A DNA stretch of 48,133 bases from Octopus sinensis (GCF_006345805.1 NW_021834649.1:1-48133), one strand, 5' to 3'. Shown: positions 1,362 to 36,881, numbered from the stretch's first letter. Notes: a model not told the origin generated them from the sequence alone. Numbers and translations are program-made.

Positions 1362-1757
1362 TAGGCGTAGGAGTGGTTGTGTGGTAAGTAGCTTGCTTAC
1401 CAGCCACATGGTTCCGGGTTCAGTCCCACTGCGTGGCACCTTGGGCAAGTGTCTCCTGCTATTGCCTCGGGCCGACCAAAGCCTTGTGAGTGGATTTGGT
1501 AGACGGAAACTGAAAGAAGCTCGTCGTATATATGTATATATATGTGTGTGTGTGTATGCTTGTGTGTCTGTGTTTGTCCCCCTAGCATTGCTTGACAACC
1601 GATGCTGGTGTGTTTACGTCCCCGTTACTTAGCGGTTCGGCAAAAGAGACCGATAGAATAAGTACTGGGCTTACAAAAGAATAAGTCCCGGGGTCGAGCT
1701 GTCGATTAAAGGCGGTGCTCCAGCATGGCCGCAGTCAAATGACTGAAACAAGTAAAA
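1362..1757 (+). mobile_element. SINE family A, full length (tRNA head + internal (TA/TG)n + tail)
   Basis: Pol III A/B-box-like head, internal microsatellite at ~1527-1570, tail ending CAGTCAAATGACTGAAACAAGTAAAAGA. The same layout recurs at 4860, 21136, 22075(-), 32414 and 37140(-). Confidence 0.9.
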
Positions 1758-1804
1758 GAAAGAAAAGAAAAAGAAAAAGAAAGAAGAATATACACCTATA
1801 CACA

Positions 1805-4859: not shown

Positions 4860-5243
4860 TAGGCGCAGTTTACCAACCACATGGTTCCAGGTTCAGTCCC
4901 ACTGCGTGGCACCTTGGGCAAGTATCTTCTACTATAGCCCCGGGCTGACCAAAGCCTTGTGAGTGGATTTGGTAGACGGAAACTGAAAGAAGCCCGTCGT
5001 ATATATGTATTTATATATATATATATATGCGTGGGTGTGTTTGTGTGTCTGTGTTTGTCCCCGTAGCATTGCTTGACAACCGATGCTGGTGTGTTTACGT
5101 CCCCGTCACTTAGCGGTTCGGCAAAAAGAGACCGATAGAATAAGTACTGGGCTTACAAAAGAATAAGTCCCGTGGTCGAGTTGCTCGACTTAAAGGCGGT
5201 GCTCCAGCATGGCCACAGTCAAATGACTGAAACAAGTAAAAGA
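4860..5243 (+). mobile_element. SINE family A, near full length
   Basis: Same head, (TA)n and tail as 1362-1757, with a small deletion in the head. Confidence 0.88.
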
Positions 5244-5569
5244 GTATATATATATGCTTGTTGTTCCCTCACCTGCGTGTGTATGTGTGTGTGTGTGTGT
5301 GTGGGGGGGGTGTACAGGAAGGGCTTCATGCAGTTTCCCTCTACGAAATCCTCTCGCCTGCCCACGGTGCCATCACTCAGTTGAGACCGAACTCAATCTT
5401 CTCACATACGCCGGGCTTCTTTCCAGTTTCCGCCTATCAAATCCACTCACAAGGCTTTGGTCGGCCCCCAAAGGCATCGCCAAGCAGTGAGATCGAACTC
5501 GTAACCATGTGACTGAAAAGCAAACATCTTCTCAGCGACGCCCGGACGCAATCATAGTCAAAACATATA

Positions 5570-6104: not shown

Positions 6105-6144
6105 AATAGTCAGGACATATATTCAAAGAAAAAGGGTTCCTTAC

Positions 6145-6283
6145 CGTTAAAACTATCGTAAAATGTTGGTACATAATCCGCACTGTATCCTTTCGTTGTA
6201 TAATTAAGGAGCATCGAAGTCTTTCCTACGGCTCCATCGCCGACTACCACGCACCTGATGGTGCGTGGATTCGAACCCACCAT
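6145..6283 (-). CDS. First coding exon of a Rho-family small GTPase (RhoU/RhoV- or Cdc42/RhoQ-related); downstream exons not found in window
   Basis: [46 protein letters not shown] contains the P-loop GDGAVGKT and switch I YVPT. ATG context GAGATGG; phase-1 donor AACG|GTAAGG at 6144. A strong acceptor (CTGAC branch, long pyrimidine tract, CACAG) at 6463-6464 defines a 318-nt exon, 6145-6462. Confidence 0.9.
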
Positions 6284-6498
6284 CTCGTAACGCCAGGTAT
6301 CGAGGGTAAAATGAACGAGACACGGTTCACGTTGTATCCGTCTGGGTATGAATGGATGAATGAATGAATGAGGAGATGGCTGGTTGGCTGGTTGGGCGGG
6401 TGGGTGGCTGGTTGGTTGGTTGGTTGGTGATAGCGTCGTTAAGCGAATGAGGTTGGGTTTAGCTGTGGCGAAAGGAGGAAGGGGGAGAATAAGAGTGT

Positions 6499-6499
<1 letters not shown>

Positions 6500-6530
<31 letters not shown>

Positions 6531-7268
6531 ATGGGTGAGAGGGGAAAGGAGTGTGAGAGAGAAATAAAGAGTGTGTGAGAGGGAAAAGGAGTGTGAGAGA
6601 GAGTGAGGCAAAATAGAAAGTGTGTGAGAGGGCGAGAGAGTGTGAAGGAGAAATAAAGAGTGTGTGAGAGGGAAAAGGAGTGTGAGAGAGATATAAAGAG
6701 TGTGTGAGAGGGACAGAGAGTGTGAGGGAGAGATAAAGAGTGTGTGAGAGGGAAAAGGAGTGTGAGAGAGAGTGAGGCAAAATAGAAAGTGTGTGAGAGG
6801 GTAAGAGGGTGTGAAGGAGAAATAAAGAGTGTGTGAGAGGGAAAAGGAGTGTGAGAGAGATATAAAGAGTGTGAGAGAGGGACAGAGAGTGTGAGGGAGA
6901 GATAAAGAGTGTGTGAGAGGGTAAAGGAGTGTGAGAGAGAGTGAGGCAAAATAGAAAGTGTGTGAGAGGGCGAGAGAGTGTGAAGGAGAAATATAGAGTG
7001 TGTGAAAGTAAGAGAGTGAGGGAGAAATAGAAATAGAAAGGGTGTGAGACGGACAGAGAGTGTGAGGGAGATATGAAAAGTGTAGGAGACGGAGAGAGAG
7101 AGAGAGTGAGGCAAAATAGAAAGTGTGTGAGAGGGCGAGAGGGTGTGAAGGAGAAGTAAAGTGTGTGTTAGAGGGAAAAGGAGTGTGAGAGAGAAATAGA
7201 AAGTGTGTGAGGGGAGAGAAAGTGAGGAAGTTAGTAGGAAGGAGGAGAGAGTGAAAGAGTCGGAGCGG

Positions 7269-7299
<31 letters not shown>

Positions 7300-8110
7300 G
7301 TTGTATGAAAGTGTGACGGAGGGGATTTAGGAAGTGTGAGAGAGGGAGTATGTGAAGAAGGAGAGTGAGGAAGGATAGGTGCGAGAAGGATAGACACATG
7401 TGTGAGAGAAAGAAAGGGAGTGTGAAAGAGAAAGGGGGAAATGTGTGTTTGATAGAGACGGAGTGATTGTGGGAGAGAGAGAGAGAGAAAGACAGAGTGT
7501 GTAGGAAGGAGAGAGAGTGTGAAGAAGAGAGAAAGAGAGAGTGAATGTGACATACAGAAGAAATATGAGGGAGTGGGAGAGTGTCCAAAGAGAGAGAGAG
7601 AGAGAGAGGGACAGGAAGAAAGGTTGGGAGCGTAGCTTTAAGTGAGAATGACGTAAGAGAAGGAGGAAGTGAGTAAGACTAGCGAGAGAGAGAGAGAGAG
7701 AGAGAGAGTACATGTGACGTTGTAGATAAGGAGATAAATATAAGGATGAGGAAAAGAGGGTAAGAAATGGACGAAAACGAAAGTAGACGTAGAAAGCGCG
7801 AGCGAGCGAGAGAGAGAGAGAGAGAGAAAGAAACGGGAAGGGAGAGAGAAAGAGAGAAACGGGGGAAAGAGAGAGAGAAACGGGGCGGAGAGAGAGAGAG
7901 AGGAGAGAGAAACGGGGAAAAAGAGAGAGAAGCGGGGACGGAGAGAGAGAGAAACGGGGAGAAAGAGAGAAAGAGAGAAACGGGGACGGAGAGAGAGAGA
8001 AACGGGGAGGGAGAGAGAAAGAGAGAAACGGGGAGGGAGAGACAAAGAGAGAGGGGGAGAGAAACGAAGAGGGGGTGAAAAAATAATAAATTAAGAAAGA
8101 GAGAGAGAGG
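6500..8110. repeat. GA/GT-rich minisatellite and (GA)n tracts
   Basis: Recurrent GTGTGTGAGAGGG, GAGTGAGGCAAAATAGAAA and GAGAGAAACGGGG units; source of the L/S/H-rich minus-strand ORFs. Confidence 0.9.
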
Positions 8111-8157
8111 AAAATCACGTGCACACACACACACACATACATACATATACATATATA

Positions 8158-8321
8158 CGACGGGCTTCTTTAAGTTTCCGTCTACCAAATCCACTCACAA
8201 GGCATTGGTCGGCCCGAGTCTATAGTAGAAGACACTTGCCCAAGATGCCACGCAGTGGGACTGAACCCGGGACCATGTGGTTGGTTAGCAAGCTACTTAC
8301 CACACAGCCACTCCTGCGCCT
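8158..8321 (-). mobile_element. SINE family A head
   Basis: CGACGGGCTTCTTT...CAGCCACTCCTGCGCCT is the reverse complement of the head module. Confidence 0.88.
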
Positions 8322-8589
8322 ATATATACACACACATGCCGCCTACCCAGAAGTAGTATCGGTAGATCGAACACACAGACACAGACAGAGCGAGGTCGAT
8401 GCTATGTAGACAGAACGAACACACAGACACAGAGATGTCATCCTTATAGCATAGATACGAAGGCTTTGATCAAATCAACGGGACGAACACACAGACACAG
8501 ACGTGGAGTACAGATACATGCACACACGCAATCACACACACGCATTATTTTCTACTCTAGGCACAAGGCCCGAAATTTTGGGGGAAGGG

Positions 8590-9475
8590 GCCGGTCGATT
8601 ATATCGACCTCAGTGCATAACTGGTACTTAATTAATCGACCCCGAAAGGATGAAAGGCAAAGTCGACCTCGGTGGAATTTGAACTCAAAACGTAAAGACA
8701 GACAAAATACCTATTTCTTTACTGCCCACAAGGGGCTAAACACAGAGGGGACAAACAAGGACAGACAAAGGGATTAAGTCGAATATATCGACTCCAGTGC
8801 GTAACTGGTACTTATTTAATCGACACCGAAATGATAAAAGGCAAAGTCGACCTGGGCGGAATTTGAACTCAAAACGTAAAGACAGACAAAATAACCTATT
8901 TCTTTACTACCCACAAGGGGCTACACACAGAGGGGACAGACAAAGGGATTAAGTCGATTATATCGACCCCAGTGCATAACTGGTAATTAATTTATCGACC
9001 CCGAAAGGATGAAAGGCAAAGTCGACCTCGGTGGAATTTGAACTCAAAACGTAAAGACAGACAAAATACCTATTTCTTTACTGCCCACAAGGGGCTAAAC
9101 ACAGAGGGGACAAACAAGGACAGACAAAGGGATTAAGTCGAATATATCGACTCCAGTGCGTAACTGGTACTTATTTAATCGACACCGAAATGATAAAAGG
9201 CAAAGTCGACCTGGGCGGAATTTGAACTCAAAACGTAAAGACAGACAAAATAACCTATTTCTTTACTACCCACAAGGGGCTACACACAGAGGGGACAGAC
9301 AAAGGGATTAAGTCGATTATATCGACCCCGGTGCATAACTGGTAATTAATTTATCGACCCCGAAAGGATGAAAGGCAAAGTCGACCTCGGCGGAATTTGA
9401 ACCCAGAACGTAGCGGCAGACGAAATACGGCCACGCATTTCGCCCGGCGTGCTAACGTTTCTGCCAGCTCGCCCG
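8590..9475 (-). mobile_element. Tandem array (~5 units) of SINE family B with a 359-bp higher-order duplication
   Basis: Sequence from 8641 is repeated apparently exactly from 9000. Only the last unit (9400-9475) keeps the tRNA-like head. Confidence 0.9.
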
Positions 9476-10849: not shown

Positions 10850-11522
10850 TAATTTATACATATATATATATACAAATATACAAATATATATATATATTAT
10901 ATATATATATATATATGTAAATACAAGCATCCATTCATCCATCCATACATATATACATACATACGTACATACATACGTACGTACGTACATACATACGTAA
11001 TACATACATACGTACATAGATACATACATACATACATACATACGTACATACATACATAACATACGTACATACATACATACATACATACATACATACATAC
11101 ATACGTACATACATACATACGTACATACATACATACGTACGTACATACATACATACCACGTATATACATACATACGTACGTACATACGTATGTACGTACA
11201 TACATACATACGTACATAGATACGTACATACATACATACATACATACATACGTACATACATACGTACATACATACACACATACATACACACATACATACA
11301 CATACATACATACACACACATAGACACACACATACATACATACATACATACATACATACATACATACATACATACATACGTACATACATACATACGTACA
11401 TACACACACATACATACATACATACACATGTATATACATACATACGTACGTACATACATACAAATATCTATACACACACAAACACTTCCAAATACCATAT
11501 ATGAATAGGATATAAATACAAA

Positions 11523-11558
<36 letters not shown>

Positions 11559-11600
11559 AACGCACACACACACATAAACGCACACACACACACACACACA
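10850..11600. repeat. (TA)n/(TACA)n/(CA)n microsatellite block
   Basis: Visible directly; it explains the YVCM-type minus-strand ORFs. Confidence 0.97.
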
Positions 11601-14600
11601 CATCCCTCCGCCTCATCTTCACCCCCTCCACACACAACACTGTTCCCTCCAACTCCCCCGAAGAAGACTCTTCCTCCCCTCCCTTCTCACTCCATCCCCC
11701 CGAACCGCAGAAGCACCCCGCACCACAACCCGGCTGCATCACATTGCGCCGTTGCGGGCTGCAATTGCAGGTGCACCGCCTTGCAGCACTGCACCGTCCC
11801 ACAGCGCTACGTGCTACGCCGCTCCAGGCACCGACACAGCAACTCCCCGTGCCACGCGACACGGCCCTGCACCGCATCGCGGAACCACTGCACGGCACGA
11901 TACTGCACCGGATCACACTGTACCGCCGCAAACAAATGCACTTCAGTGCACCACGGTAGTGCACATCATAATACACCGTACTACACTTCAAAACACTGTA
12001 ATACACTAAATAGCACTGTACTATACCTCGACGAACCATACAACACTGCACCTAAACTCGCGGCGCAGTGTCACACTACAAAATCCCACTGTGCACCACA
12101 CTGCAACGCATCAAATCGCACCCAGCTACGTTGCACTGCGCCGCAACACATCCCACTTGAATACACCACCCGACACAACACTGTCCCATACTACAGGAGA
12201 CCAAGTTCTCGCGCGGTATACAACAACACCTCATACTTCATCACGAACTGTAGCCACCTGCATTACACCACACCAAACTACATCACAGGCGGCAAGGCCA
12301 TACCTGCCTCCGCATCTGACTCCGCCGCAAAGTACATCTCCACACCTGCCGCCTCACCGTGGCGTGCGAAACCAAACCGCAGTAAACCGCCAGAGTTTTT
12401 GCAGCTCAACTCCACGCCGCGCACCTCTGCGTCGCAACACACTCCACAAGACCAAAGTACATCACAGCGTGCTAAGTTGCATAAAAGTACACCAGAGTAC
12501 GCCACACTGCAGAGTGCGTCGCAGCGTGTCACATCGCGTCGAAGTACAACACAGCGTGCGAAACCACTTCCAAGCACACCAGAGTACGCCACACCACGAA
12601 GTACATCGCAGCGTGTCGCATCACTTCAAAGTACATCACAAAGAACCAAGTCACATCAGAGTGCATCAAAGTACGCCAAACCACAAGGTACATCACAGCG
12701 TGCCAAAGCACATCAAAGTGCATCAAAGTACTCCACCTCGAACCAAAGTGCATCTCAGGACGAGACACCGCACCAAGATACATCCCAGTACGAGACACCG
12801 CACCAAAGTACACACCAGTACGTCTCCCTACACCGCCCCAAAGTAGAGTACATCCTCACCTACAAAACAACAGCACCACAGGCTGCACGCTATCGTAACG
12901 TCACACAGTATATCAAACCGAATCGTCCAACCGTACACTACGCCACTCCATCGTACCATACCACTCCAACGTACCATACCACTCCGAGTCATTCCAATTT
13001 ATACTGCATCGATCCACACAGCACTGCAGCAGCGAATCGCACACTTCACTATATCACTCAGCAGTACACGCCATCGCAACAGACCAACCAACACAACACT
13101 ACACTAACCTACAACGCACCACTCCAAACTGCACCGCAGTACACTGCATCGCAACAGACCAACCGACCCAACACTACGCTAACCTACCTCGCACCACTCC
13201 AAACTACACCGCAATACACTGCATCGCAACAGACCAAACGACCCAACACTACACTAACCTACATTGCACCACTCCAAACTGCACCGCAATACACTGCAAC
13301 ACAACAGACCAAACGACACAACACTACACTAACCTACATTGCACCACTCCAAACTGCACCGCAGTACACTGCATCGCAACAGACCAAACGGCACAACACT
13401 ACAGTAACCTACCTCGCACCACTCCAAACTACACCGCAATACACTGCATCGCAACAGACCAAACGACCCAACACTACACTAACCTACATTGCACCACTCC
13501 AAACTGCACCGCAATACACTGCAACACAACAGACCAAACGACACAACACTACACTAACCTACATTGCACCACTCCAAACTGCACCGCAGTACACTGCATC
13601 GCAACAGACCAAACGGCACAACACTACAGTAACCTACCTCGCACCACTCCAAACTACACCGCAATACACTGCATCGCAACAGACCAAACAATACAACACT
13701 ACAGTAACCTACCTCACACCACTCCAAACACCACCGCAATACACTGCATCGCAACAGACCAAACAGCACAACACTACAGTAACCTACCTCGCACCACTCC
13801 AAACACCACCGCAATACACTGCATCGCAACAGACCAAACAACACAACACTACAGTAACCTACCTCGCACCACTCCAAACACCACCGCAATACACTGCATC
13901 GCAACAGACCAAACAACACAACACTACAGTAACCTACCTCGCACCACTCCAAACACCACCGCAATACACTGCATCGCAGTACACTGCATCGCAACAGACC
14001 AAACAACACAGCACTACACTAACTTACACTGCACCACTCCAAACTTCACCGCAATACACTTCATCGCAACAGACCAAACAACAAGTAAGTTACACCACAC
14101 TACCCCAAAACACACCGCATTGCAGTGCACCACTCCATAGCACAACTACACTCCATCAAACAGTGCCATCCCACGCTACACCTCTTACCCTACACTATAT
14201 CCCTGCGTACCACACTCTGTACCACCATCCTCTGTATTACTACACTGCGCCAAACAACACCACCCTAAGCGAAACTACATCGCTCCACACTACAGCAGAC
14301 TCCTCCACACTATATTCCCACTCCACTCCACTCTACAACCCCTCATACTTCACTTCCCCGCACCACACTTACTTGCACTACACCTCACTGCACCACGCAC
14401 CGCCTCACTGCACGAGACCACATCCTCTTGTGCCAGACCACAGTGCGCTGCCGCAGTACACCACTCTACAGCCAGGTGCACTACACAGCAGCGCACCTCA
14501 GTACACTACCTTGCAATATACCACACCACTCCAAACCACTCTCAATTACGCCGCACCCCAAACAACCACACCAAGCAACCCGGCACCCCTGTGGACCACA

Positions 14601-17207
14601 TCGCCCAACAGTGCCACTGCGGTACCCACGGCCACACCAGACTACTTTACATCAGCGCAGACCGTACCAAGCCACACTCCGTTGCCGCACCCTGAACTGT
14701 ATCAAGCTGTACCACAAAGTACCACACCCCGTCACACTGAAGGACAACGTGCCACCCCGCGTTCAGCCAAGAAGACCCTCACAACACCACGTTACACTAC
14801 TGCACTAGCTCCAACCACAACAAAGTACGTTGCCCCACAACAAACCGTGCTTCGGTATAGCACACCACACAGCACCAAAACCACAAGCCGCAGCGTACTT
14901 TACCGTACCAAATTACCCCAAAGTACGACATATAACACTAAAGTACAGCAAAGCAAGCCTTACTACTCTGGACCACATCTAGCTACATTGCAAAGCACTA
15001 CATCACATCGCGTCACACCCCACGAAACTAAACTAAGCCCCACTGTACTAGAGTCATCAGCAGTAGAGTCCCCTCCATTAGAATCAATCCCAGCAGAGTC
15101 CGTAACATTAGAGTCCCCTGCGTTACAATCAATCCCAGCAGAGTCCGTAACATTAGAGTCCCCTGCGTTACAATCAATCCCAGCAGAGTCCGTAACATTA
15201 GAGTCCCCTGCGTTACAATCAATCCCAGCAGAGACCGTAACATTAGAGTCCCCTGCGTTACAATCAATCCCAGCAGAGTCCATAACATTAGAGTCCCCTG
15301 CGTTACAATCGATCCCAGCAGAGTCCGTAACATTAGAGTCCCCTGCATTAGAATCAATCCCAGCAGAGTCCGTAACATTAGAGTCCCCTGCATTAGAATC
15401 AATCCCAGCAGAGTCCATAACATTAGAGTCCCCTGCGTTACAATCAATCCCGGCAGAGTCCGTAACATTAGAGTCCCCTGCGTTACAATCAATCCCAGCA
15501 GAGTCCGTAACATTAGAGTCCCCTGCGTTACAATCAATCCCAGCAGAGACCGTAACATTAGAGTCCCCTGCGTTACAATCAATCCCAGCAGAGTCCATAA
15601 CATTAGAGTCCCCTGCGTTACAATCGATCCCAGCAGAGTCCGTAACATTAGAGTCCCCTGCATTAGAATCAATCCCAGCAGAGTCCGTAACATTAGAGTC
15701 CCCTGCATTAGAATCAATCCCAGCAGAGTCCATAACATTAGAGTCCCCTGCGTTACAATCAATCCCGGCAGAGTCCGTAACATTAGAGTCCCCTGCGTTA
15801 CAATCAATCCCAGCAGAGTCCGTAACATTAGAGTCCCCTGCGTTACAATCAATCCCAGCAGAGTCCGTAACATTAGAGTCCCCTGCATTAGAATCCATCC
15901 CAGAAGAGTTCATAACATTAAAGCCCCATGCATTAGAATCCATCCCAGAAGAGTTCATAACACCAGAGTCTACTGCATTAGACTCTACCCTTATAGAGCC
16001 CAACACACTTGAACCCACCCAACAAGAGTTCACAGCTCTAGAGTCAAACCCACAAGAGTCCAACACACTAGAGTCTACAGCGCCAGAGGTGAACCCACAA
16101 GAGTCTAACACAGTAGAGTCCATAGTACTAGCTAACACCACATCAAACTGCACAAAACCTCTCCCTACCAAACTTTACCCAATCGACCCCCACCCCACCA
16201 AACCGCACTTCACGACACAGCACTCTACCCCAGGATGCTCCACCTTCACAACAGTTTACGAAGCCACACCGCATTACAAGACACTACGTCACATCTCGCT
16301 TAATCGCCCGTACCACCACTCTACTACACCTCATCTCCACACGAGCCCCTGCACCGCACCCGACTACCTCACCCTGCTCCACATCTCCCCACACTGCCCC
16401 TCACCCTACTACACGACTCCGCAATATACAACGCCGCCGACCGCATATTACACCAGCCCGCATCAAAAGCTCAACTGCTCCTACCCATATTTCGCTTCAA
16501 CACCTTGCATCCCACACCCCTGTGTCGCACCATCTCCCTGTGCCCCACGCCATCGCATTGTGTCCCCTTGCACCCCGTCCAACCGTGTAACACTCCCTGC
16601 AATTTACTGCGCCACTCCATACAAAGCTAAATCGCAGTGCACCGCGTTACCTGCTCTTAACCGCAGCACATCACACTGTGCTATACTACATCACAGCGCG
16701 GCACAGCGCACTACGTTGCCGACACTTCCTTGCGTCCCACAGCACCCCAGTGCGCCACAACACTCCACCAACTGCTCTGTACTGCGCAGCACTGCATTAT
16801 CTTCATTGTGCACCGTCAAACCGCACCCCACTCACCTGAACCACCCTTCACCGTACCAATCACACTGCATCATACCACCACGTTACCAGACGTCACAGTT
16901 TCCTGCACCGCACCAAACAACGCTGCACCGCACAGCACAACGCCTCCACCTTCCATCTGTACAAACTACACTGCGCTGCACTGCAGCCCACACAGCTGTA
17001 ACACGCAGTAGGGATCTTTGCTGCACATCGCCACACATCACTGCACCAGTAACACGCTGTGTCACACCTCCACGCACTTGCACTGTCTATTTTTCGCATT
17101 ACGTCCTACGTCACACTGCACTAGATTTCACTGAAGAACCCAGCGGCGTCACGCCTCATCGCACAATTCACACGCCACCCGGCTCTAACCATGGCTTCGG
17201 TGAATGA
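11505..17207 (+). CDS. Putative giant exon/ORF (1,900 codons, no Met) encoding a Thr/Pro/Ser/His/Tyr/Gln-rich, mucin-like repeat protein
   Basis: One frame is open from the TGA at 11502-11504 to the TGA at 17205-17207. The other plus frames reach at most 251 aa in the ORF track. Repeat periods are 75, 45 and 15 nt, and variation within repeats is often synonymous (GCG/GCA, TCA/TCG, CCA/CCG). The track's initial M is a TTG. Confidence 0.65.
13063..14084 (+). repeat. 75-nt coding tandem repeat (~14 copies; QYTASQQTKRHNTTLTYIAPLQTAP)
   Basis: ACACTGCA recurs at 13141, 13216, 13291 and onward. A 3-unit block is duplicated (13216-13440 vs 13441-13665), and there is one 15-nt QYTAS duplication near 13965-13990. 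Confidence 0.95.
15068..15960 (+). repeat. 45-nt coding tandem repeat (~20 copies; ESVTLESPALQSIPA) with a 315-nt higher-order repeat
   Basis: Unit GAGTCCGTAACATTAGAGTCCCCTGCGTTACAATCAATCCCAGCA; the variant GAGACC recurs at 15232 and 15547. Confidence 0.95.
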
Positions 17208-18411
17208 TGAACAAAACCTGTTTAAGGGTATGAACGAGGTGAAGACATCCCTCGGTAGTTTTATCACTACGGAAAGCGTTAATTCAGATAACACTGGCTA
17301 CCAAAAATCCGTATCTGAGATCCACCCATCACAGAAGGAAACGCCGCATGAAGATGTACCTGTTGCTAGCAAGAATGATAATGTACGCGCTGGTGGGGCT
17401 ACGACAAACATTGGTGAACACACCGAAGAAATAAATGTCACTTACCCCCACATCAGTCTGCAGCCGGCAAAGAAGAAACTGTCATCGCTCGAGTCACAGC
17501 GAGTGATGAACGTGTATATTGACATGGTGGAAAGAGCCGTGTTGGTAGGTATGTTTCCATTTGTCTTGGAGAATTTGCACCTCTTCGAGGACGCGTTCGA
17601 CGATCACTTGAAAGCGTGTTTTAAGAACCACGCCGACCTCCAGGCATCCTACACGGAAACGCGGCGTGAGTTTCTCACGTTTTGCCGCAGAATGCGTCGG
17701 TCCGCCCAGCCGCAGCCGAAAACTATAGACCTTACTGCCGAAGCTGAGAAAATGAAAAAGCTTTCGAATTGTGATTTTGAGGGTGAAGAAGAGGAAGAGA
17801 GTACCGTTGTTATGACTAGTGAAGATGACACTGATATTCACTATAGGCATTCCACAAGTGATGATGTAGATGGTACGGACATGTACCATGATGGCGATGA
17901 TGAATATGATGCCAGCATTGGGAAAGCCAGGAAAAAAAATAGCTACGACAGCCATAGCAACTGGATGCTTAAGGAAGATGAGGATGGGGATTACCCTTTG
18001 CAATCCTTATCGTCGAGTGCTTCGCCCTACAGCGTCGACTCCTCGGTGGAAATGAGGGAGAGCAGCGACGAAAGCCTGAGGGCTCACGAACTCGGCCGCC
18101 AGCTGTCGAACCTCGCCGACCGGCTGGGCAACTCCTGTAAGAATATACTGCGCGCGGTAAACGAGAACACGACGGCCGAGAAGGAGATACTGAGCTACAG
18201 GGACAACATGTCGCCGGAGCTGCAGGAGTTTGTGAGCAAACTCAACGAGCTGAAGAGCATTTTGAGAATCCGCCTGCTGACCACCCCTCTCGAAGAAAAG
18301 GAGCAAGATGAATACCTGAAAGAAACGGCAGAGAAAGCGGTTCAGAACAAGAAGCTTATTGAAAAACTTGAGAAAGAACTGGCAGAGGTAACAGCGGCCA
18401 AGGACGAGCAG
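17191..18411 (+). CDS. IQCD: Dynein regulatory complex protein 10 / IQ domain-containing protein D, coding exon 1
   Basis: AACCATGG Kozak context. KKLSSLESQRVMNVYIDMVERAVLV and LNELKSILRIRLLTTPLEEKEQ match the DRC10 coiled-coil segments as I recall them. Phase-0 donor CAG|GTATTA at 18412. Confidence 0.88.
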
Positions 18412-18435
18412 GTATTACGTATGGGTTGTTTATTA

Positions 18436-19430
18436 TTATCGCTATGTTCAGAGTTCAAATTCCGCCGATGTCGATTTTGCCTTTATTCCTATCGGGGTCG
18501 ATTAAATAAGTACCAGTTACGCACTGGGGTCGATATAATCGACTTAATCCCTTTGTCTGTCCTTGTTTGTCCTCTCTGTGTTTAGCCCCTTGTTGGTAGT
18601 GAAGAAATAGGTATTTTGTCTGCCACTACGTTCTAAGTTCAAATTCACCCGAGGTCGACTTTGCCTTTCATCCTTTCGGGGTCGATTAAATAAGTACCAG
18701 TTACACACTGCGGTCGATATAATCGACTTAATCCCTTTGTCTGTCCTTGTTTGTCCTCTCTGTGTTTAGCCCCTTGTTGGTAGTGAAGAAATAGGTATTT
18801 TGTCTGCCACTACGTTCTGAGTTCAAATTCACCCGAGGTCAACTTTGCCTTTCATCCTTTCGGGGTCGATTTAATAAGTACCAGTTACGCACTGGGGTCG
18901 ATATAATCGACTTAATCCCTTTGTCTGTCCTTGTTTGTCCTCTCTATGTTTAGACCCCTGTGGGCAATAAATCCGTTTGTCTGTCCTTGTTTGTCCTCTC
19001 TGTGTTTAGCCCCTTGTAGGTAGTAGAGAAATAGGTATTTTGTCTGCCGCTATGCTCTGTGTTCAAATACCGCCCAGGTCGACTTTGCCTTTCATCCTTT
19101 CGGGGCTCGATTAAATAAGTACCAGTTACACACTGGGGTCGATGTAATCGACTTATCCCCTTTGTCTGTCCTTGTTTGTCCCCTCTGTGTTTAGCCCCTT
19201 GTGGGTAGTAAAGAAATAAGTATTCGTCTGCCACTACGTTCTGAGTTCAAATTCCGCCGAGGTCGACTTTGCCTTTCATCCTTTCGGGGTCGACTTTACC
19301 TTTCATCCTTTCGGGGTCGATTAAATAAGTACCAGTTACGCACTGGGGTCGATATAATCGACATAATCCCTTTGTCTGTCCTTGTTTGTCCCCTCTGTGT
19401 TTAGCCCCTTGTGGGTAGTAAAGAAATAGG
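18436..19430 (+). mobile_element. Tandem array (~6 units, ~165 bp) of head-truncated SINE family B
   Basis: Units TACGTTCTGAGTTCAAATT...GCCCCTTGTGGGTAGTAAAGAAATAG joined through GGTATTT; starts ~25 bp after the exon donor. Confidence 0.92.
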
Positions 19431-20169: not shown

Positions 20170-20403
20170 GTGAAACAGAAGACTATGAAAATACGCAAAC
20201 TACAAAACGATATCCAGCAGATTGACAAATCGGCCGTAGAGAATATCCGTCGTGTGAAGGCCGAAGCGGACAACACCATCGCTACCGAGATGAAAGGCAG
20301 TGAGAGCAAGACCCAGGCCGTCTACCAGGAACTGGTCCACGCCAAAGCGAATCTTGCAAACCAAACGACAGCGCACAGAGAGAACGAACAAGATTTACGA
20401 AGG
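20170..20403 (+). CDS. IQCD: DRC10/IQCD coding exon 2
   Basis: TTTTTCTAG|GTG...AGG|GTAAGA; 78 codons, VKQKTMKIRKLQNDIQQID...RENEQDLRR coiled coil, phase 0/0. Confidence 0.92.
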
Positions 20404-21135: not shown

Positions 21136-21305
21136 GCCTAGGAGTGGCTGTGTGGTAAGTAGCTTGTTTACCAACCACATGGTTCCGGGTTCAGTCCCAC
21201 TGCATGGCATTTTGGGCAAGTGTCTTCTGCTATAGCCCCGGGCCAACCAATGCCTTGTGAGTGGATTTGGTAGACGGAAACTGAAAGAAGCCCGTCATAT
21301 ATATG

Positions 21306-21349
<44 letters not shown>

Positions 21350-21562
21350 GTGTGTATGTGTTTGTGTGTCTGTGTTTGTCCCCCTAGCATTGCTTGACAA
21401 CCGATGCTGATGTGTTTACGTCCCCGTCACTTAGCGGTTCGGCAAAATAGACCGATAGAATAAGTACTGGGCTTACAAAGAATAAGTCCCGGGGTCGATT
21501 TGCTCGACTAAAGGCGGTGCTCCAGCATGGCCGCAGTCAAATGACTGAAACAAGTAAAAGAG
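21136..21562 (+). mobile_element. SINE family A, full length
   Basis: Head + (TA)n + tail, as at 1362. Confidence 0.9.
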
Positions 21563-26858: not shown

Positions 26859-27810
26859 ATGATCAAGATTGGTTGTGTAAATGCGCGTGGCTTGGGGTCC
26901 CCTTGGAAACAAGGGTACCTCTTAAACGACATAAAGTCACATAAGTTAGAAATCATAGCCATAAGTGAGACTAGACTCCACAATCCGCGGGCCCTAAAGA
27001 CCATGTGTGGCGGACAGTTCAACATTTATTTTTCCCCCTGTCTGCCGAGAATGGGCGGTAGTGGCACCGCGGTACTTTTTCGCAAGAGTCTAGATCTCAA
27101 AGTAAGGACAATATTCGTAGACCTGGAGGGTAGACTGGTCGTCCTGGATGTCGACGGCAGCAATGGGTGCGCTTTTCGACTCGTATCAGTCTACGCACCA
27201 CCCTTAACAGCTTGGGCGGATTTCTTTCAACGTCTAGAAGTATTCTTGGGAACGTCTCGTCCTTTACTCTTAGTGGGGGATTGGAATGCTACCTTGGACA
27301 CGCATGTAGACTACGTGGGTAGAGATAGGAATAGACGGGGATGCAAATGCCTCAGAGACCTGCTCAGACACTTTCAACTGTCTGACAGGTTCCAACTAGA
27401 CCACCCGAATGCGCCAACGTGGACATGGAGCAACTGCATCGGGTCGTCGAGATCGTATCTAGATAGGATACTGTGTAGGACAGTAGACAGAGATAGCATA
27501 GGATGTCCACAATTCCACATAGTCAGCTACACGGATCACAAACTTGTGACATGTACGCTAGACTTAGGTAAAACACTTAGGCAGGGTCCCGGATACTGGA
27601 AACTAAACGCGTCTTTCCCATCGAGACAGGTTTTCAGAGACCGGATTAGCACACTAGTAAAGAGGGCTTTGACGGGAGCCATCATCAACAACAAATGGTG
27701 GTTTGCCCTCAAGAGAGCAGTAAAAGCAGAAGCGATTAGGTACAGCAAAGCACTAGCCATAGATAGAAATAGAGTAGAGGGTGAGCTAGTTAAGAAGCTA
27801 GAAGCGGCAT
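26859..27810 (+). pseudogene. ORF2 apurinic-like endonuclease domain of the Tx1-like LINE
   Basis: NARGL, SETRL, VYAP, GDWN, YLDRI and SYTDH motifs; frameshifted near 27810. Confidence 0.93.
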
Positions 27811-28005
27811 CGCATCCGACGTTTTGGCGGCGAGGTTGGCCCTCGAACAACACTTCAACGCCAAACAGGAAGGATGTGCTGTCAAAGCTAGGATACGTGC
27901 TCTAAGGAACGAAGGTGTTGGAGCTGCGAGAGAGGCCTGGGTGGCAGAGGCGCAACAGGGCAACAAAGCCACCATTCGGTCCCTGGTAGATGAACAGGGC
28001 GCGAA

Positions 28006-30230
28006 TTGCTCGAGCCAAGTAAAATGTGTGAGGCCTTTCAGCAGCATTTTGCCCGACTGTTCGGGACGAGTGGAGGGCAAGAACGTAGGGTGGACTTCAG
28101 TGCCTACCTACATAGCCTACCACGACTCTCGACAAGAAAGGCAGGGTGCTGTGAAGGTGCCATCACGGTGGCGGAAGTGCAGGACGCGATGGCAGAATGC
28201 TCGAGGGACAAATCATCGGGTTTGGATGGTCTGCCCTACGAGCTTTACAATTGTATGCCAGACTTGTTTGGAGATCTCTTGGTGGCGGTGTACTGCAACT
28301 GGCAGCAAAACGGGAGCATTCCTGGTTTTGTGAGCCGAGGAGCCGTAACACTGCTGAAGAAAGATCGAAATAAGGGAAATGTAATAGATAACTTTAGGCC
28401 CATCACTCTGCTCAATGCAGACTTGAAAATTTTGGCCAAGGTGCTAGCCAAGAGGTTGGCGCTTGTCATCGAGAAACTGGTCGACAAGGCGCAAACATGC
28501 GCCGTGCCAGGCCGGACCATCCATGACAACCTCCACCTAATGCACTACATCATAGACAGGGTAGTTAACGAACCTGGCATGGGTGGGGCGCTGATCAATT
28601 TGGATCAATCGAAAGCTTTTGATAGGGTAGACCATCGATACTTGCAGGCGGTCCTCAGAGCGGCTGGCTTCGGTCCCGTCTTCCGCGGCTGGATAGCTGC
28701 TTTGTACAGAGGCATCCGTTCAGTAATTCACGTGAATGGACATCTATCGAGACCCTTCGACATCGCACGTTCGGTCCGTCAAGGATGCCCCCTCTCGTCG
28801 CTTCTATACGTATTGACTCTCGAGCCATTATTGCGGAAGCTGGCAACTTTGAGGGGTATCCAGCGAGAATGGGGATGCGGGACGAGTGTGTCTGCATACG
28901 CGGACGACGTCACCGTCATAGTGTCTAGCCACGAGCACATCGAGCAGGTCGGCGAGACACTGAAAAACTACGAAGCGGTGACAGGAGCGAAAATCAACCG
29001 GGAAAAGTCAGTGGGCTTGCGACTAGGCACCTGGAGAAGCAAGCCCATGCTGTCCACCAGCGCCTCCGTCGTGGGACGCTGGACCGACGGCCCGGTTGAG
29101 TTGCTCGGGGTCTGGTTTGGTCCGGACCTCCAAGTGGAGAAGAACTGGAACGAGATAACGAGTAGGGTGATCACTCTCGCCTGGCAATGGGCCGAGAGGA
29201 AACTGTCCCTAAAAGGTCGGGCGGAGGTGGCGAACACGTACATCGCGTCCGTCATCTACTACCGCCTGACCGTCGTACCTTGTCCCGAACCTACCATCAC
29301 CAAACTACAACGCATTCTCTTTCGCTTCTTGTGGAAAGGATGCATCCCGATGGTCAGGCGATCCATTTGCTGTCAACACCCGTTAAAAGGAGGGCTGGGC
29401 ATGCCGTGGTTGATGATGCGCAGACACGCGCTGAGACTGCGACATCTCTGGCTTTATGTAGACGACGGTGAACAGGTGTGGTCGCCGTTTGTGAGGCACG
29501 CTTTCCCGCAGCTCGTCTCCATGACCGAACTGCAGTCGTGGATCAAAAAGAGGCCGAGGAAGGGCGAATGGCACCGCGAGTGTCGCGTTGCTCTCAAGCA
29601 ACTCTGCCGTCCTGGGTCGACCTTGAGCGACTTCAACACAACCAAAGCATCCTATAGGGGATTAATGGAGGGGAGGTACGACGACGAGCTCGGGGCGAAC
29701 CTGGACGTCGACGAGGAGTACCTGACCCGCCTGTTCAGGACGACTTTCGGGCCAGGGCCCATGGACAACTTCCAGAGATCCCTGGCCTGGCAGTGCTACC
29801 AAGAAGCGCTACCCGTTCAGGATAAGCTCTACAGACACGGCTCGAGAAACACGGGGCCGACCTGCCCGAGATGCGGTCAGAGCAACGAAACCGTTCTGCA
29901 CGCACTCGTGCAGTGTCCAACAATTTCCGACCTGTGGGCTTGTGTCGAACAATGCTGTCACGTGTGGACGAGTCGGTTTATCAGCTGAGTCTATCGTCAA
30001 TATTGTCACGCCTCCTTCCTTCAAACGGGAAGGAAGAGCTATTTTCATCATCCTTGTGGCTATGGCGCAAGAAGTATCTGGTGGACGCGCGTCTGAAAGG
30101 ATTGGAGACAAACACTTTCCTCTCTGGTCAATCTCTCATCAACTTCTTCAAGTACCACTTGAAAAGGAAAGTGAGAGTAGAGAGGCAAGTTTTGTCTAGC
30201 GAATGTTTTAAAAAAAGATGGGTGATGTAG
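28006..30230 (+). pseudogene. ORF2 reverse transcriptase and C-terminal domains of the Tx1-like LINE
   Basis: GLDG, FRPITLLN.D.KI, DQSKAFDRV, RQGCPLS, AYADDV and LGVWF motifs; frameshifts near 28005, 29950 and 30080. Confidence 0.95.
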
Positions 30231-31348: not shown

Positions 31349-31420
31349 CGAAAGTTCAAGGCAGAAACTGAAGTTGAAAATTGGATACAAAAATACGACC
31401 AAGACATGGGACAACTGCAG
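31349..31420 (+). CDS. IQCD: DRC10/IQCD coding exon 3
   Basis: TTTTCTATCAACAG|CGA...CAG|GTAATC; 24 codons, RKFKAETEVENWIQKYDQDMGQLQ, the hallmark DRC10 segment. Confidence 0.95.
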
Positions 31421-31425
31421 GTAAT

Positions 31426-32093
31426 CCGCCACCACCACCACCACCACAAATGCCACCACCACTACCATCGCCACCACCACCACTACTGCGACAACCACCA
31501 CCATCACCACCACCGCCGCCACCACCACCACCATCGCCACCACCACTACAACCGCCACCACTACTGCCATCACTACCGCCACCACCACCACCACCACTAC
31601 CACCACCCTGCCACCACCACCATCACTACCGCCGACACCACCACTACTGCCACAACCACAACCACCACCACCACCACCATCGCCGCCGACGCCACCATCA
31701 CCACCACCACCACCACCACCACCACCACTACCATCACCACCACCACTGCCACCACCACCACCACCACCACCACCACCATCGCCGCCACCACCACTAACAC
31801 CACCACCACCACCACTACCATCACCACCACCACTGCCACCACCACCACCACCACCACCACCACCATCGCCGCCACCACCACTAACACCACCACTGCCACC
31901 ACCACCACCACCACACCCCCCATCGCCGCCACCACCACTAACACCACCACTACCATCACCACCACCATTAACACCACCACCATCACAACCACCGCTGTCA
32001 CCATCGCTGCCGCCGCCGCCACCGCCACCACCGCCAGCACCAGCATTCCCCCCACCACCAGTACCACTCCCACCACCACCATCACTACCGCCA

Positions 32094-32149
<56 letters not shown>

Positions 32150-32360
32150 ACCACCACTTCTACCACTAATACTACTCCTACCACCACCATAGCCGCTTTC
32201 ACAGTACTCACAAATGTTGCTCTCCTATGACTTACTGCTCTCTCCTCCTTTGTTCTACCTGCCCTAAATTCTTCTGCTCTCCTTTTGTCTCCGTCCATCC
32301 CCCCTACCACCTCTTCCACCTCCACCTCCTCCTCCTCCTCCTCCACCTCCTCCTCCTCTC
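31426..32360. repeat. (CAC/CCA)n trinucleotide low-complexity tract and (CCT)n
   Basis: Visible directly; gives poly-H/T/P/V ORFs in all frames. Confidence 0.95.
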
Positions 32361-36593: not shown

Positions 36594-36881
36594 GAAGAAA
36601 TTGAGACCATTGAAAAGATCTACTCCGAAGAGAAGAGACAATTGATGGAACTGGAGGAACGGTTCAGAAGTTTGGAGATTGAATACAGGAAAATCAGGAG
36701 AGAGAGGGAGGACACAAAGAAGTGGAAAGAAGAGACGGATAGAAGGTTGGTGCGCATGATGAGGGCGGCGACCACGATCCAGGCATTTTGGCGCTCATAT
36801 AAGGTGCGGAAGATGCTGAAGGTGAGAAAGAAAAAAGGGGGAGCAGGCAGCGGGAAGAAGAAGAAGAAGAAGAAGAAGTAA
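36594..36881 (+). CDS. IQCD: DRC10/IQCD terminal coding exon (IQ motif + lysine-rich tail)
   Basis: CTCTTCCAG|GAA; ...RMMRAATTIQAFWRSYKVRKMLKVRKKKGGAGSGKKKKKKK*. Confidence 0.95.
   Translation, partial: EEIETIEKIYSEEKRQLMELEERFRSLEIEYRKIRREREDTKKWKEETDRRLVRMMRAATTIQAFWRSYKVRKMLKVRKKKGGAGSGKKKKKKKK

What the first reader, a model, noticed from the sequence alone, without database searches (positions are those of the whole stretch)
14085..17207. How the giant ORF couples to DRC10: overlap, frameshift or in-frame splice
Seen: the ORF stops 14 nt past the DRC10 ATG (CCATGGCTTCGGTGAATGA), in a different frame. The DRC10 frame is open back to a TAG at 17122-17124 that could be an acceptor (CACTAG|). 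A perfect donor CAA|GTAAGT lies at 14085, exactly on a codon boundary at the end of the 75-nt array. Splicing 14085-17124 would fuse ~860 repeat-rich codons in frame to ISLKNPAASRLIAQFTRHPALT-MASVND..., giving a dynein-regulatory subunit with a huge disordered N-terminus. Alternatives: an overlapping uORF or stop-restart bicistron, a +1 frameshift, or a 1-bp assembly error between 17125 and 17204.
Basis: partly seen in the sequence, partly recalled or inferred. Interest (0 to 1): 0.7.

Follow-up and report, generated by a model that had tools for sequence, protein, structure and literature searches.

The report
Start-codon-free giant ORF leading into octopus DRC10
In octopuses, a conserved, unannotated reading frame of about 1,900 codons that has almost no ATG in any frame runs straight into the cilia and sperm-tail gene DRC10, overlapping it by 17 bases, so the two proteins are probably made separately from one messenger RNA rather than fused.

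Summary
The window is an Octopus sinensis contig.

**The giant ORF is real coding sequence.**
- The frame from 11505 to 17207 has 0 stops, against 84 and 29 in the other two frames.
- It is open in all three octopods examined.
- Most indels are multiples of three, and dN/dS is 0.39-0.55.
- Its C-terminal motifs are conserved.
- About 60% of it is missing from every protein database searched.

**DRC10 starts at its own ATG (17191).** That ATG is conserved and sits in the context aaccATGG. DRC10 lies in the +1 frame of the giant ORF.

**The same layout is in all three octopods.** O. bimaculoides and an octopus RNA contig have the same 17-nt overlap and the same upstream TAG. That rules out a 1-bp assembly error.

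**The proposed splice fusion (14084/17125) is not supported.** The supposed intron is about 1,013 stop-free conserved codons. The RNA contig reads straight through the acceptor. The acceptor lacks the T-rich tract of real DRC10 acceptors.

**New finding: ATG has been purged.** There are 3 ATGs in 5.7 kb, against 20-25 expected from codon shuffles, and none in frame. Synonymous codon choice avoids creating ATG (p = 0.0008). Control coding sequences show no such avoidance.

**Best reading (about 0.5):** a two-cistron mRNA in which ribosomes scan through the upstream cistron to DRC10.

**Main rival (about 0.3):** two overlapping transcription units.

The parts
11635..11710 (+). Pyrimidine-rich block at the 5' edge of the giant ORF, about 97% identical to O. 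bimaculoides. It ends in ...ccgcag|A. It may be a promoter or 5' leader, or the polypyrimidine tract and acceptor of the giant exon.
   Evidence: Alignment; acceptor-like string. Its function is inferred, not shown.
11505..17207 (+). Giant open frame of about 1,900 codons: no stop, no in-frame ATG. The first ~100 nt run through an (AC)n microsatellite, so coding probably begins after about 11604. It encodes a Thr/Pro/Ser/Ala/Gln/His/Tyr-rich protein.
   Evidence: Open in O. bimaculoides (three segments between N gaps) and in L003. dN/dS is 0.39-0.55. 13 of 17 indels are multiples of 3.
11936..11959 (+). Out-of-frame mini-uORF of 7 codons. Its ATG, length and stop are conserved in O. bimaculoides.
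13061..14083 (+). 75-nt tandem array, 13.4 copies, giving a 25-aa repeat (TPQYTASQQTKxxNTTxTYxAPLQT).
14085..14090 (+). Donor-like GTAAGT at a codon boundary; O. bimaculoides has GTAAGG. NCBI's 717-aa model may use it with an acceptor at 14611|14612. The arithmetic fits uniquely, but this was not confirmed.
15064..15970 (+). 45-nt tandem array, 20.2 copies, giving a 15-aa repeat (ESPALQSIPAESVTL).
15928..15936 (+). Out-of-frame mini-uORF of 2 codons (ATG CAT TAG).
16235..16303 (+). Out-of-frame mini-uORF of 22 codons.
16221..17204 (+). Conserved Cys/Pro/Thr-rich C-terminal region of the giant protein. Motifs: TTLPTLxC, (V/I)TPPRTCTxxFxHYxLRHTxLD, TIYTPP, HxFGE-stop. It has no homologue in the protein databases searched.
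   Evidence: 77% and 48% identity to the two other octopods; no hits.
17122..17124 (+). TAG in the DRC10 frame, 69 nt upstream of the ATG. It sits at the same position in all three octopods and closes the DRC10 frame.
17191..17207 (+). 17-nt overlap between the DRC10 start (aaccATGG) and the giant ORF's stop (GAA TGA). DRC10 is in the +1 frame.
17191..18411 (+). DRC10-like exon 1 (407 codons).
20170..20403 (+). DRC10-like exon 2 (78 codons).
31349..31420 (+). DRC10-like exon 3 (24 codons).
36594..36881 (+). DRC10-like exon 4 (95 codons plus stop, carries the IQ motif). The four exons add up to 604 aa.

Best explanation
Two real coding sequences sit on one octopod transcript and are translated separately.

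**The upstream cistron (about 11.6-17.2 kb).** It encodes a fast-evolving, repeat-rich, methionine-free protein that is conserved among octopods. No AUG start was found, so it begins either at a near-cognate codon near its 5' end or at an AUG in an unidentified upstream exon.

**The same RNA serves as the 5' leader of DRC10.**
- AUG has been removed from all three frames. Only 2-22-codon mini-uORFs remain.
- The RNA is G- and U-poor and weakly structured.
- 40S subunits that skip the weak upstream start, or that resume scanning after a mini-uORF, can therefore scan to the first strong AUG. That is aaccAUGG at 17191, where DRC10 starts.

**The overlap.** Ribosomes translating the giant frame terminate 14 nt later, at a UGA formed by the conserved Asn-Asp/Glu codons of DRC10. 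The overlap is therefore a by-product of two abutting cistrons, not a fusion device.

**Shown:**
- both ORFs and their overlap in three species;
- purifying selection on the giant ORF;
- the ATG purge, including at synonymous sites;
- an RNA contig that joins both ORFs.

**Inferred:**
- that one mature mRNA carries both ORFs in vivo;
- that scanning is the route to DRC10;
- where the giant ORF starts.
For: **1. The giant frame is coding.**
- It has 0 stops against 84 and 29 in the other frames.
- All its large tandem arrays have periods that are multiples of 3.
- It is open in O. bimaculoides and in L003.
- 13 of 17 indels are multiples of 3.
- dN/dS is 0.39-0.55.
- Its C-terminal motifs are conserved.

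**2. The architecture is the same in three octopods.**
- The ATG context, the 17-nt overlap and the upstream in-frame TAG all match.
- Three non-octopod DRC10 loci lack any such upstream ORF.

**3. An RNA contig joins the two ORFs.**
- L003 comes from SRR3401912, an octopus meta-transcriptome according to PMC11662614.
- It carries a fully spliced 607-aa DRC10 CDS preceded by at least 850 nt of the upstream ORF, colinear with the genome.

**4. ATG is purged.**
- There are 3 ATGs in 5,686 nt, against 44 expected (first-order Markov) and 20-25 (codon shuffles). None of 2,000 shuffles was as low. ATG is the most depleted trinucleotide, while its complement CAT occurs 134 times.
- NNA|TGN codon junctions: 2 observed, 15.2 expected. 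NAT|GNN junctions: 1 observed, 9.6 expected.
- A-ending synonymous codons make up 9% before TGN codons and 43% elsewhere: p = 0.0008 in O. sinensis and p = 0.004 in O. bimaculoides.
- L003 has 0 ATGs in 850 nt against about 5 expected. O. bimaculoides has 7 in 4,501 nt against about 35 expected.
- Control coding sequences (DRC10 exon 1, the two LINE ORFs and the L003 DRC10 CDS) show no avoidance.

**5.** Every remaining upstream ATG opens only a 2-22-codon uORF, and one of them is conserved.

**6.** Synonymous divergence in the giant ORF (dS 0.23-0.34) is two to three times lower than in the adjacent DRC10 exon 1 (dS 0.69). This points to an RNA-level constraint.

**7.** The leader is weakly structured: -18.9 against -36.7 kcal/mol per 150 nt in O. 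sinensis, and -11.5 against -28.7 in L003.

**8.** Precedents show the same signature. RTBV scans through 900 nt of AUG-free ORFs whose first ORF starts at AUU (PMC5902531). Green-algal bicistronic loci show ATG depletion before ORF 2 (PMC11291117).
Against: - No start codon for the giant ORF was found, and its 5' end and transcription start site are unknown.
- L003 is a short-read assembly of total RNA. The giant ORF's 3' UTR must in any case overlap the 5' end of DRC10, so an assembler could have merged two overlapping transcripts.
- There is no RNA evidence for O. sinensis itself.
- I know of no cellular mRNA scanned over more than 5 kb.
- Part of the ATG deficit comes from low T and G content and from repeated motifs. 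The codon-shuffle and synonymous-site tests control for much of this, but not all.
- The O. bimaculoides region has several N gaps, so continuity of its frame cannot be checked.
- Neither protein has been shown to be translated.
Confidence: 0.5

Rival explanations
1. There are two independent, overlapping transcription units. DRC10 has its own promoter and start site inside the 3' coding part of the giant gene. The giant gene's mRNA runs into DRC10 exon 1 or intron 1 and is polyadenylated there. The RNA contig is an assembly merge of the two transcripts.
For: - The giant ORF's stop lies inside DRC10 exon 1, so its 3' UTR must overlap the DRC10 mRNA. Short-read assemblers merge such overlaps (inference).
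- NCBI annotates separate genes in both species.
- AATAAA or ATTAAA motifs exist downstream of the stop, for example at 17430 and 18501.
Against: - It gives no reason for purging ATG from all frames over the whole 5.7 kb, including at synonymous sites, in three species.
- It does not explain the lower dS along the entire ORF.
- No conserved TATA-like motif was seen by eye upstream of the ATG.
- The poly(A) motifs are not at conserved positions.
Confidence: 0.3
2. The mRNA is bicistronic, but DRC10 is reached by termination-reinitiation. Ribosomes finish the giant ORF at UGA 17205-17207 and restart at the AUG 14 nt upstream, as on calicivirus and influenza B mRNAs.
For: - The stop and start overlap closely, and the overlap is conserved in three species.
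- A block 60-130 nt upstream is conserved at the nucleotide level.
Against: - There is no UGGGA (TURBS motif 1) within 200 nt upstream in any of the three species.
- Protein conservation explains the conserved block.
- Restart after about 1,900 codons needs special signals (PMC5902531).
- It does not explain the ATG purge.
Confidence: 0.07
3. A programmed +1 ribosomal frameshift between 17125 and 17204, most simply at GAA-UGA, fuses the giant protein to DRC10.
For: - DRC10 is in the +1 frame. A shift at the stop would join ...GFGE to DEQNLF... (frame arithmetic).
- The overlap is conserved.
Against: - The DRC10 ATG is conserved in a strong context (aaccATGG or gatcATGA), inside a region where ATG is otherwise purged.
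- GAA-UGA is not a known +1 shift site (own knowledge: antizyme UCC-UGA-U, Ty1 CUU-AGG-C). The base after the UGA differs between species: U in two, A in O. bimaculoides.
- Rfam finds no frameshift element, and the local fold is not significant, z = -1.18.
- Echinoderm DRC10 proteins are 481-488 aa with no extension.
Confidence: 0.04
4. One reading: an intron from 14085 to 17124 is removed, fusing about 860 repeat codons in frame to a 22-codon extension and DRC10. This would occur at least as a minor isoform.
For: - The donor-like site is at phase 0, and it is kept as GTAAG in O. bimaculoides.
- The acceptor-like TAG is kept in three species and is in phase.
- NCBI's 717-aa model may use the same donor, with a different acceptor (unconfirmed).
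Against: - The 'intron' is about 1,013 stop-free codons under purifying selection.
- The L003 RNA is unspliced at the acceptor.
- The acceptor has 20% T in its tract, against the T-rich tracts of real DRC10 acceptors.
- One GTAAGT in this ORF is not beyond chance (and my estimate of about 0.3 expected).
- The fused product would still lack an in-frame ATG.
Confidence: 0.04
5. A 1-bp assembly error near 17125-17204 hides a single continuous ORF.
For: None beyond the frame offset itself.
Against: - The offset, overlap and upstream TAG are the same in the O. sinensis assembly, the O. bimaculoides assembly and an independent RNA contig.
- The DRC10 frame has 84 stops upstream.
Confidence: 0.01

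Closest known systems
Rice tungro bacilliform virus ORF I-II-III (leaky scanning through AUG-free ORFs)
   Same: - Long upstream ORFs kept free of internal AUGs in all frames.
- The first ORF starts at a non-AUG codon (AUU).
- Short overlaps between consecutive ORFs.
- The downstream ORF is reached by scanning.

Source: PMC5902531.
   Different: - RTBV is a viral pregenomic RNA, and the AUG-free stretch is about 900 nt. Here it is a cellular animal gene with about 5.6 kb.
- Here the upstream start is unknown and nothing has been tested experimentally.
Nuclear bicistronic genes of green algae (Chlamydomonas, Auxenochlorella)
   Same: - Cellular mRNAs with two ORFs.
- A weak ORF 1 start.
- Statistical depletion of ATG before ORF 2.
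- Leaky scanning shown by mutagenesis.

Source: PMC11291117.
   Different: - The algal ORF 1s are small, whereas here ORF 1 is about 1,900 codons and has no in-frame ATG at all.
- The host here is an animal (a cephalopod).
- Co-transcription here rests on a single assembled RNA contig.
Animal bicistronic genes such as SNURF-SNRPN and Drosophila stoned A/B (from my own knowledge, not checked here)
   Same: Two unrelated proteins encoded in series on one nuclear mRNA.
   Different: - I know of no reported purge of AUG over several kb in those cases.
- Their upstream cistrons start with AUG.
Antizyme-type +1 programmed frameshifting (from my own knowledge)
   Same: The downstream ORF is in the +1 frame and overlaps a UGA stop.
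   Different: - ORF 2 here has its own conserved AUG in a strong context.
- The shift site is not UCC-UGA-U.
- No stimulatory RNA element was found.
Calicivirus and influenza B termination-reinitiation (TURBS)
   Same: Closely overlapping stop and start codons of consecutive ORFs.
   Different: - No UGGGA motif lies upstream.
- The upstream ORF is far longer.
- That mechanism does not require an ATG purge.

Membership tests
DRC10 / IQCD (dynein regulatory complex subunit 10) | DRC10_N domain (PF27661) | tested here: met
   Precomputed Pfam hit on P0001, which is 100% identical to the window's exons, and on all homologues found. The local Pfam copy did not report it on exon 1 alone.
DRC10 / IQCD (dynein regulatory complex subunit 10) | C-terminal IQ motif and overall similarity to named DRC10 proteins | tested here: met
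   PF00612 is listed for P0001. Homology to echinoderm 'dynein regulatory complex protein 10' proteins reaches E = 5e-14 to 9e-10. The KKLxxxESQRV, LLTTPLEEK and ATxIQAFWRSYK motifs are visible.
Bicistronic mRNA translated by leaky scanning | Both ORFs on one mature mRNA | tested here: inconclusive
   RNA contig L003 joins at least 850 nt of ORF 1 to a spliced DRC10 CDS. It is a short-read assembly from another octopus species, and a merge of two overlapping transcripts is possible.
Bicistronic mRNA translated by leaky scanning | Depletion of AUG in all frames between the 5' end and the ORF 2 start | tested here: met
   3 ATGs observed against 20-44 expected. The synonymous-site test gives p = 0.0008. 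The depletion is conserved in three species, and control coding sequences are negative.
Bicistronic mRNA translated by leaky scanning | Weak or non-AUG start of ORF 1 | tested here: inconclusive
   There is no in-frame ATG anywhere in the open frame 11505-17207. This fits a non-AUG start, but an AUG in an unidentified upstream exon cannot be excluded.
Bicistronic mRNA translated by leaky scanning | ORF 2 starts at the first AUG in a strong context | tested here: met
   The context is aaccATGG in O. sinensis and O. bimaculoides, and gatcATGA in L003. Every earlier ATG opens a 2-22-codon uORF.
Bicistronic mRNA translated by leaky scanning | [quoted passage not shown] | not testable with these tools
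   Needs Ribo-seq, proteomics or reporter assays.
Programmed +1 ribosomal frameshift (antizyme/Ty type) | Known shift heptamer at the overlap and a stimulatory RNA element | tested here: not met
   The site is GAA-UGA-U/A. There is no Rfam hit in 11000-19000 other than microsatellite artefacts. The local fold has z = -1.18.
Programmed +1 ribosomal frameshift (antizyme/Ty type) | The downstream frame lacks its own functional start | tested here: not met
   An ATG in a strong context is conserved at the homologous position in three species.
Termination-reinitiation (TURBS-dependent) | UGGGA motif complementary to 18S rRNA within about 100 nt upstream of the stop/start | tested here: not met
   No TGGGA lies within 200 nt upstream in any of the three species.
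   The interval is a conserved stop-free ORF with dN/dS of about 0.4-0.55. The only RNA available reads through the acceptor. Junction reads in O. sinensis could not be examined.

The most novel reading that the evidence does not exclude
Octopods carry a nuclear two-cistron mRNA with three linked properties:
- its upstream cistron (at least 1,860 codons) is methionine-free and AUG-free in every frame;
- that cistron is translated from a non-AUG start;
- 40S subunits also scan through it for more than 5 kb to reach the DRC10 AUG.

To my knowledge this would be by far the longest translated, AUG-purged leader known in a cellular gene. It would couple an orphan repeat protein, possibly of sperm or cilia, to an axonemal regulator.
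Probability: 0.35. Interest if true: 0.8.

Novelty: new variant of a known kind. Interest (0 to 1): 0.62.

Why it matters
- **Animal polycistrons and scanning range.** If confirmed, this would be a clear animal example of polycistronic expression by leaky scanning. It would also extend the distance over which scanning is thought to operate by several-fold.
- **A search signature.** A stop-free frame, an ATG purge in all frames and a G/U-poor sequence together form a simple genomic signature. It could be used to look for similar hidden cistrons in cephalopod and other animal genomes.
- **An annotation gap.** About 60% of a conserved coding region of about 1,900 codons is absent from protein databases. 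The NCBI upstream models in both octopus species look wrong.
- **DRC10 biology.** The finding argues that the protein is of ordinary size, with no giant disordered N-terminus.

Tried and rejected
- **Protein searches with pieces of the giant ORF.** Pieces 16101-17204 and 11781-13180 gave no hit, not even to NCBI's own upstream models. A full HMMER scan of 1.84 billion representative proteins also gave none.
- **Pfam.** It gave only a sub-threshold Extensin_1 hit, at 27 bits against a cut-off of 105.
- **NCBI's 717-aa model.** I rebuilt it as 12015-14084 plus 14612-14695. The length fits uniquely, but that exact sequence is not in the collection, so the use of donor 14085 stays unconfirmed.
- **Is the open frame a general property of skewed, C/A-rich DNA in this genome?** Rejected. 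The other skewed stretches in the window are (CCA)n and (CA)n microsatellites with stops in all frames. The C/T-rich ORFs upstream of the GTPase exon are open in several frames at once.
- **Rfam.** The scan of 11000-19000 returned only sub-threshold miRNA-family hits on the (ATAC)n repeat.
- **RFX X-box or TATA motif upstream of the DRC10 ATG.** I looked by eye and found nothing convincing or conserved. No formal scan was run.
- **Upstream exon supplying an ATG.** Candidates exist: a donor-like AAG|GTAAAC near 10266 in a block conserved with O. bimaculoides, and CCAATAAG|GTATGT near 9668. Neither carries a plausible ATG. This remains unresolved.
- **O. bimaculoides.** N gaps prevent any test of frame continuity or of the region 5' of the ORF.

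Full report
**Identity of the window**

The 464-codon ORF at 17191-18585 is 100% identical over its exon part to an NCBI protein named 'dynein regulatory complex protein 10-like [Octopus sinensis]' (P0001, 604 aa, DRC10_N and IQ domains). That protein lies on a contig of exactly 48,133 bp, VCDQ01005722.1. Mapping P0001 back to the window gives four exons, which sum to 604 aa:
- 17191-18411
- 20170-20403
- 31349-31420
- 36594-36881

**Checking the observation**

- The ATG is at 17191 and the giant ORF's TGA is at 17205-17207, so DRC10 is in the +1 frame.
- An in-frame TAG lies at 17122-17124.
- CAA|GTAAGT, with GT at 14085, lies on a codon boundary immediately after the 75-nt array. TRF places that array at 13061-14083 with 13.4 copies.
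- The frame is open from the stop at 11502 to 17207. It has no stop, against 84 and 29 stops in the other two + frames, and no in-frame ATG.

The donor-like hexamer is not beyond chance. It is the only copy on the + strand of the ORF, and I estimate about 0.3 expected from composition. The TAG is one of many stops in the DRC10 frame.

**Is the giant ORF coding?**

Yes, on several independent grounds.
- The large tandem arrays all have periods that are multiples of 3: 75, 45, 87, 30, 18, 15 and 90 nt.
- The unique stretches between arrays are also stop-free only in this frame.
- The orthologous O. bimaculoides region (L002) is broken by N gaps, but each of its three sequenced segments has exactly one stop-free frame: 0 stops against 6-52 in the others. 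So does the 850-nt upstream part of a third octopod sequence, L003, with 0 against 7 and 8.
- 13 of 17 indels between O. sinensis and O. bimaculoides are multiples of 3.
- dN/dS is 0.49-0.55 between O. sinensis and O. bimaculoides, and 0.39 between O. sinensis and L003.
- The C-terminal ~290 residues align at 77% and 48% identity, with conserved motifs: TTLPTLxC, (V/I)TPPRTCTxxFxHYxLRHTxLD, TIYTPP and HxFGE-stop.

Other strongly skewed stretches in the window are plain (CCA)n or (CA)n microsatellites with stops in every frame, so the open frame is not a general property of skewed DNA here.

The protein is rich in Thr, Pro, Ser, Ala, Leu, Gln, His and Tyr, and has no Met. It has no detectable homologue. 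Two word-indexed searches and one exhaustive HMMER search found nothing. This also means that most of it is unannotated. NCBI's upstream gene calls are a 717-aa product at 12014-14695 in O. sinensis and a 1,122-aa product ending in another frame in O. bimaculoides.

**How the two ORFs are coupled**

The arrangement is the same in three octopods.
- In O. sinensis, O. bimaculoides and L003 the upstream frame ends ...CAT GxC TxC GGx GAA TGA, 14 nt past the DRC10 ATG.
- The TGA is formed by DRC10's conserved Asn-Asp/Glu codons.
- The DRC10-frame TAG lies 69 nt upstream of the ATG in all three.
- Three independent assemblies with the same offset rule out a 1-bp assembly error.

L003 is RNA.
- Its run, SRR3401912, is described as the octopus meta-transcriptome of the Shi et al. 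data set (PMC11662614).
- Its DRC10 CDS (607 aa) is intron-free.
- So transcripts do include sequence upstream of 17125, and this one is not spliced there.

DRC10 homologues from three non-octopod sources (L004-L006) have ordinary upstream sequence and no such ORF.

**The splice-fusion model**

The proposed intron (14085-17124) consists of about 1,013 stop-free, conserved codons under purifying selection, which is not how introns behave. Its acceptor...cgtcacactgcactag|A, has 20% T. Real DRC10 acceptors have T-rich tracts, for example cccctttttttctag|G.

The donor is kept as GTAAGG in O. bimaculoides. NCBI's 717-aa model fits, by length and uniquely among the acceptors tried, a splice from 14084 to 14612. 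I could not confirm that model. A minor isoform that uses this donor therefore cannot be excluded, but nothing supports the fusion to DRC10.

Echinoderm DRC10 proteins (481-488 aa) begin about 60-65 residues before the conserved KKLxxxESQRV motif, and octopus DRC10 begins about 95 residues before it. No N-terminal extension is needed.

**Frameshift and reinitiation**

A +1 shift at GAA-UGA would fuse the frames, but several points count against it.
- The DRC10 ATG is conserved in a strong context (aaccATGG).
- The site is not a known shift site.
- Rfam finds nothing in 11000-19000 apart from sub-threshold hits on the (ATAC)n repeat.
- The local fold is unremarkable, z = -1.18.

For termination-reinitiation, no UGGGA motif lies within 200 nt upstream in any species.

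**The new observation: an ATG purge**

- The 5,686 nt from 11505 to 17190 contain three ATGs. A first-order Markov model expects 44, and shuffling codons within the frame expects 20-25. None of 2,000 shuffles reached 3 or fewer.
- ATG is the most depleted of all 64 trinucleotides (observed/expected 0.07), while its reverse complement CAT occurs 134 times.
- The deficit shows at codon junctions. NNA|TGN occurs 2 times against 15.2 expected, and NAT|GNN once against 9.6.
- It holds at synonymous sites. For amino acids that have an A-ending codon, that codon is used 43% of the time in general but in 2 of 22 cases before a TGN codon: Fisher p = 0.0008 in O. sinensis, 4 of 26 and p = 0.004 in O. 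bimaculoides, and 0 of 6 in L003.
- The L003 leader has 0 ATGs in 850 nt (about 5 expected). O. bimaculoides has 7 in 4,501 nt (about 35 expected).
- Control coding sequences (DRC10 exon 1, both LINE ORFs and the L003 DRC10 CDS) show no avoidance of out-of-frame ATG.
- The few remaining ATGs open uORFs of 2-22 codons. The 7-codon uORF at 11936 is conserved in O. bimaculoides.
- Synonymous divergence in the giant ORF (dS 0.23-0.34) is two to three times lower than in the neighbouring DRC10 exon 1 (0.69).
- The RNA is predicted to be about half as structured as the DRC10 coding sequence. This follows from its G/U-poor composition.

**Interpretation**

An ordinary, independently expressed coding sequence has no reason to avoid out-of-frame AUGs. 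A sequence that scanning 40S subunits must cross to reach a downstream start does.

The same signature defines two known systems:
- the RTBV ORF I/II region, which is 900 nt, AUG-free and has an ORF I start at AUU (PMC5902531);
- the region before ORF 2 in green-algal bicistronic genes (PMC11291117).

I therefore favour, at about 0.5, a two-cistron mRNA. In this model the giant ORF is translated from a weak start, either a non-AUG codon or an AUG in an undetected upstream exon. DRC10 is translated from its own AUG by ribosomes that scan through.

The main rival, at about 0.3, is two overlapping transcription units with a DRC10 promoter inside the giant ORF's 3' end. In that case L003 would be an assembler's merge. 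That model does not explain the purge.

**What remains open**
- The 5' end and start codon of the giant ORF are unknown. A 75-nt pyrimidine-rich block (11635-11710) that is about 97% identical to O. bimaculoides marks its upstream edge. It could be a promoter or leader, or an acceptor tract.
- There is no RNA evidence from O. sinensis itself.
- Translation of either cistron has not been shown.

**Verdict**

It is a new variant of a known kind of mechanism, and it deserves testing with long-read RNA and ribosome-profiling data.

Noticed in passing
window 26859-29988 (+): A non-LTR (LINE-type) retrotransposon with two intact-looking ORFs sits inside DRC10 intron 2. The ORFs carry an endonuclease/exonuclease/phosphatase domain (348 aa) and a reverse transcriptase with zf-RVT (660 aa).
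   Followed up: partly
window 6110-6250 (-), with upstream 6250-8200 (-): This is the first coding exon of a Rho/Ras-family GTPase ([23 protein letters not shown]...), transcribed divergently from the giant ORF. It is preceded by about 2 kb of C/T-rich low-complexity sequence that is open in several frames at once, which is a composition artefact. The O. bimaculoides neighbour is annotated with Ras, FKBP_C and TPR hits, so synteny is conserved.
   Followed up: partly
window 1368-1759, 4868-5246, 21139-21562, 32642-33048 and others; L002 2827-3220: An interspersed repeat of about 400 bp (SINE-like) is present in at least eight copies in the window, at 80-88% identity to a copy in the O. bimaculoides locus.
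   Followed up: no
window 8560-9400 (+): Two to three tandem copies of a unit of about 360 bp (ggcacaaggcccgaaatttt...gtcgacctcggtggaatttgaactc...) lie in the region between the two divergent genes.
   Followed up: no
window 31425-32230 (+): A degenerate (CCA)n microsatellite starts right after the donor of DRC10 exon 3. It creates a spurious 274-aa His/Thr-rich ORF that begins in the exon.
   Followed up: yes
window 11000-11462: An (ATAC)n microsatellite gives many sub-threshold Rfam hits to miRNA precursor families (mir-297, mir-5014 and others). These are repeat artefacts.
   Followed up: yes
L002 10001-15434 (O. bimaculoides): The NCBI DRC10 model there (P0002, 420 aa, named 'uncharacterized protein') is truncated. 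After exon 1 it continues into 12 unrelated residues and lacks the C-terminal coiled-coil and IQ part. The locus has several N gaps.
   Followed up: partly
window 14963-16171 (-): Minus-strand ORFs of 402 aa and 286 aa lie within the 45-nt array. Any frame that is stop-free in one repeat unit stays open across the array, so they are not evidence of a gene.
   Followed up: partly
window 18501 and L002 11356: Both octopus species have an AATAAA or ATTAAA motif about 90-130 nt into DRC10 intron 1. It could serve as an intronic poly(A) site for giant-ORF transcripts.
   Followed up: no
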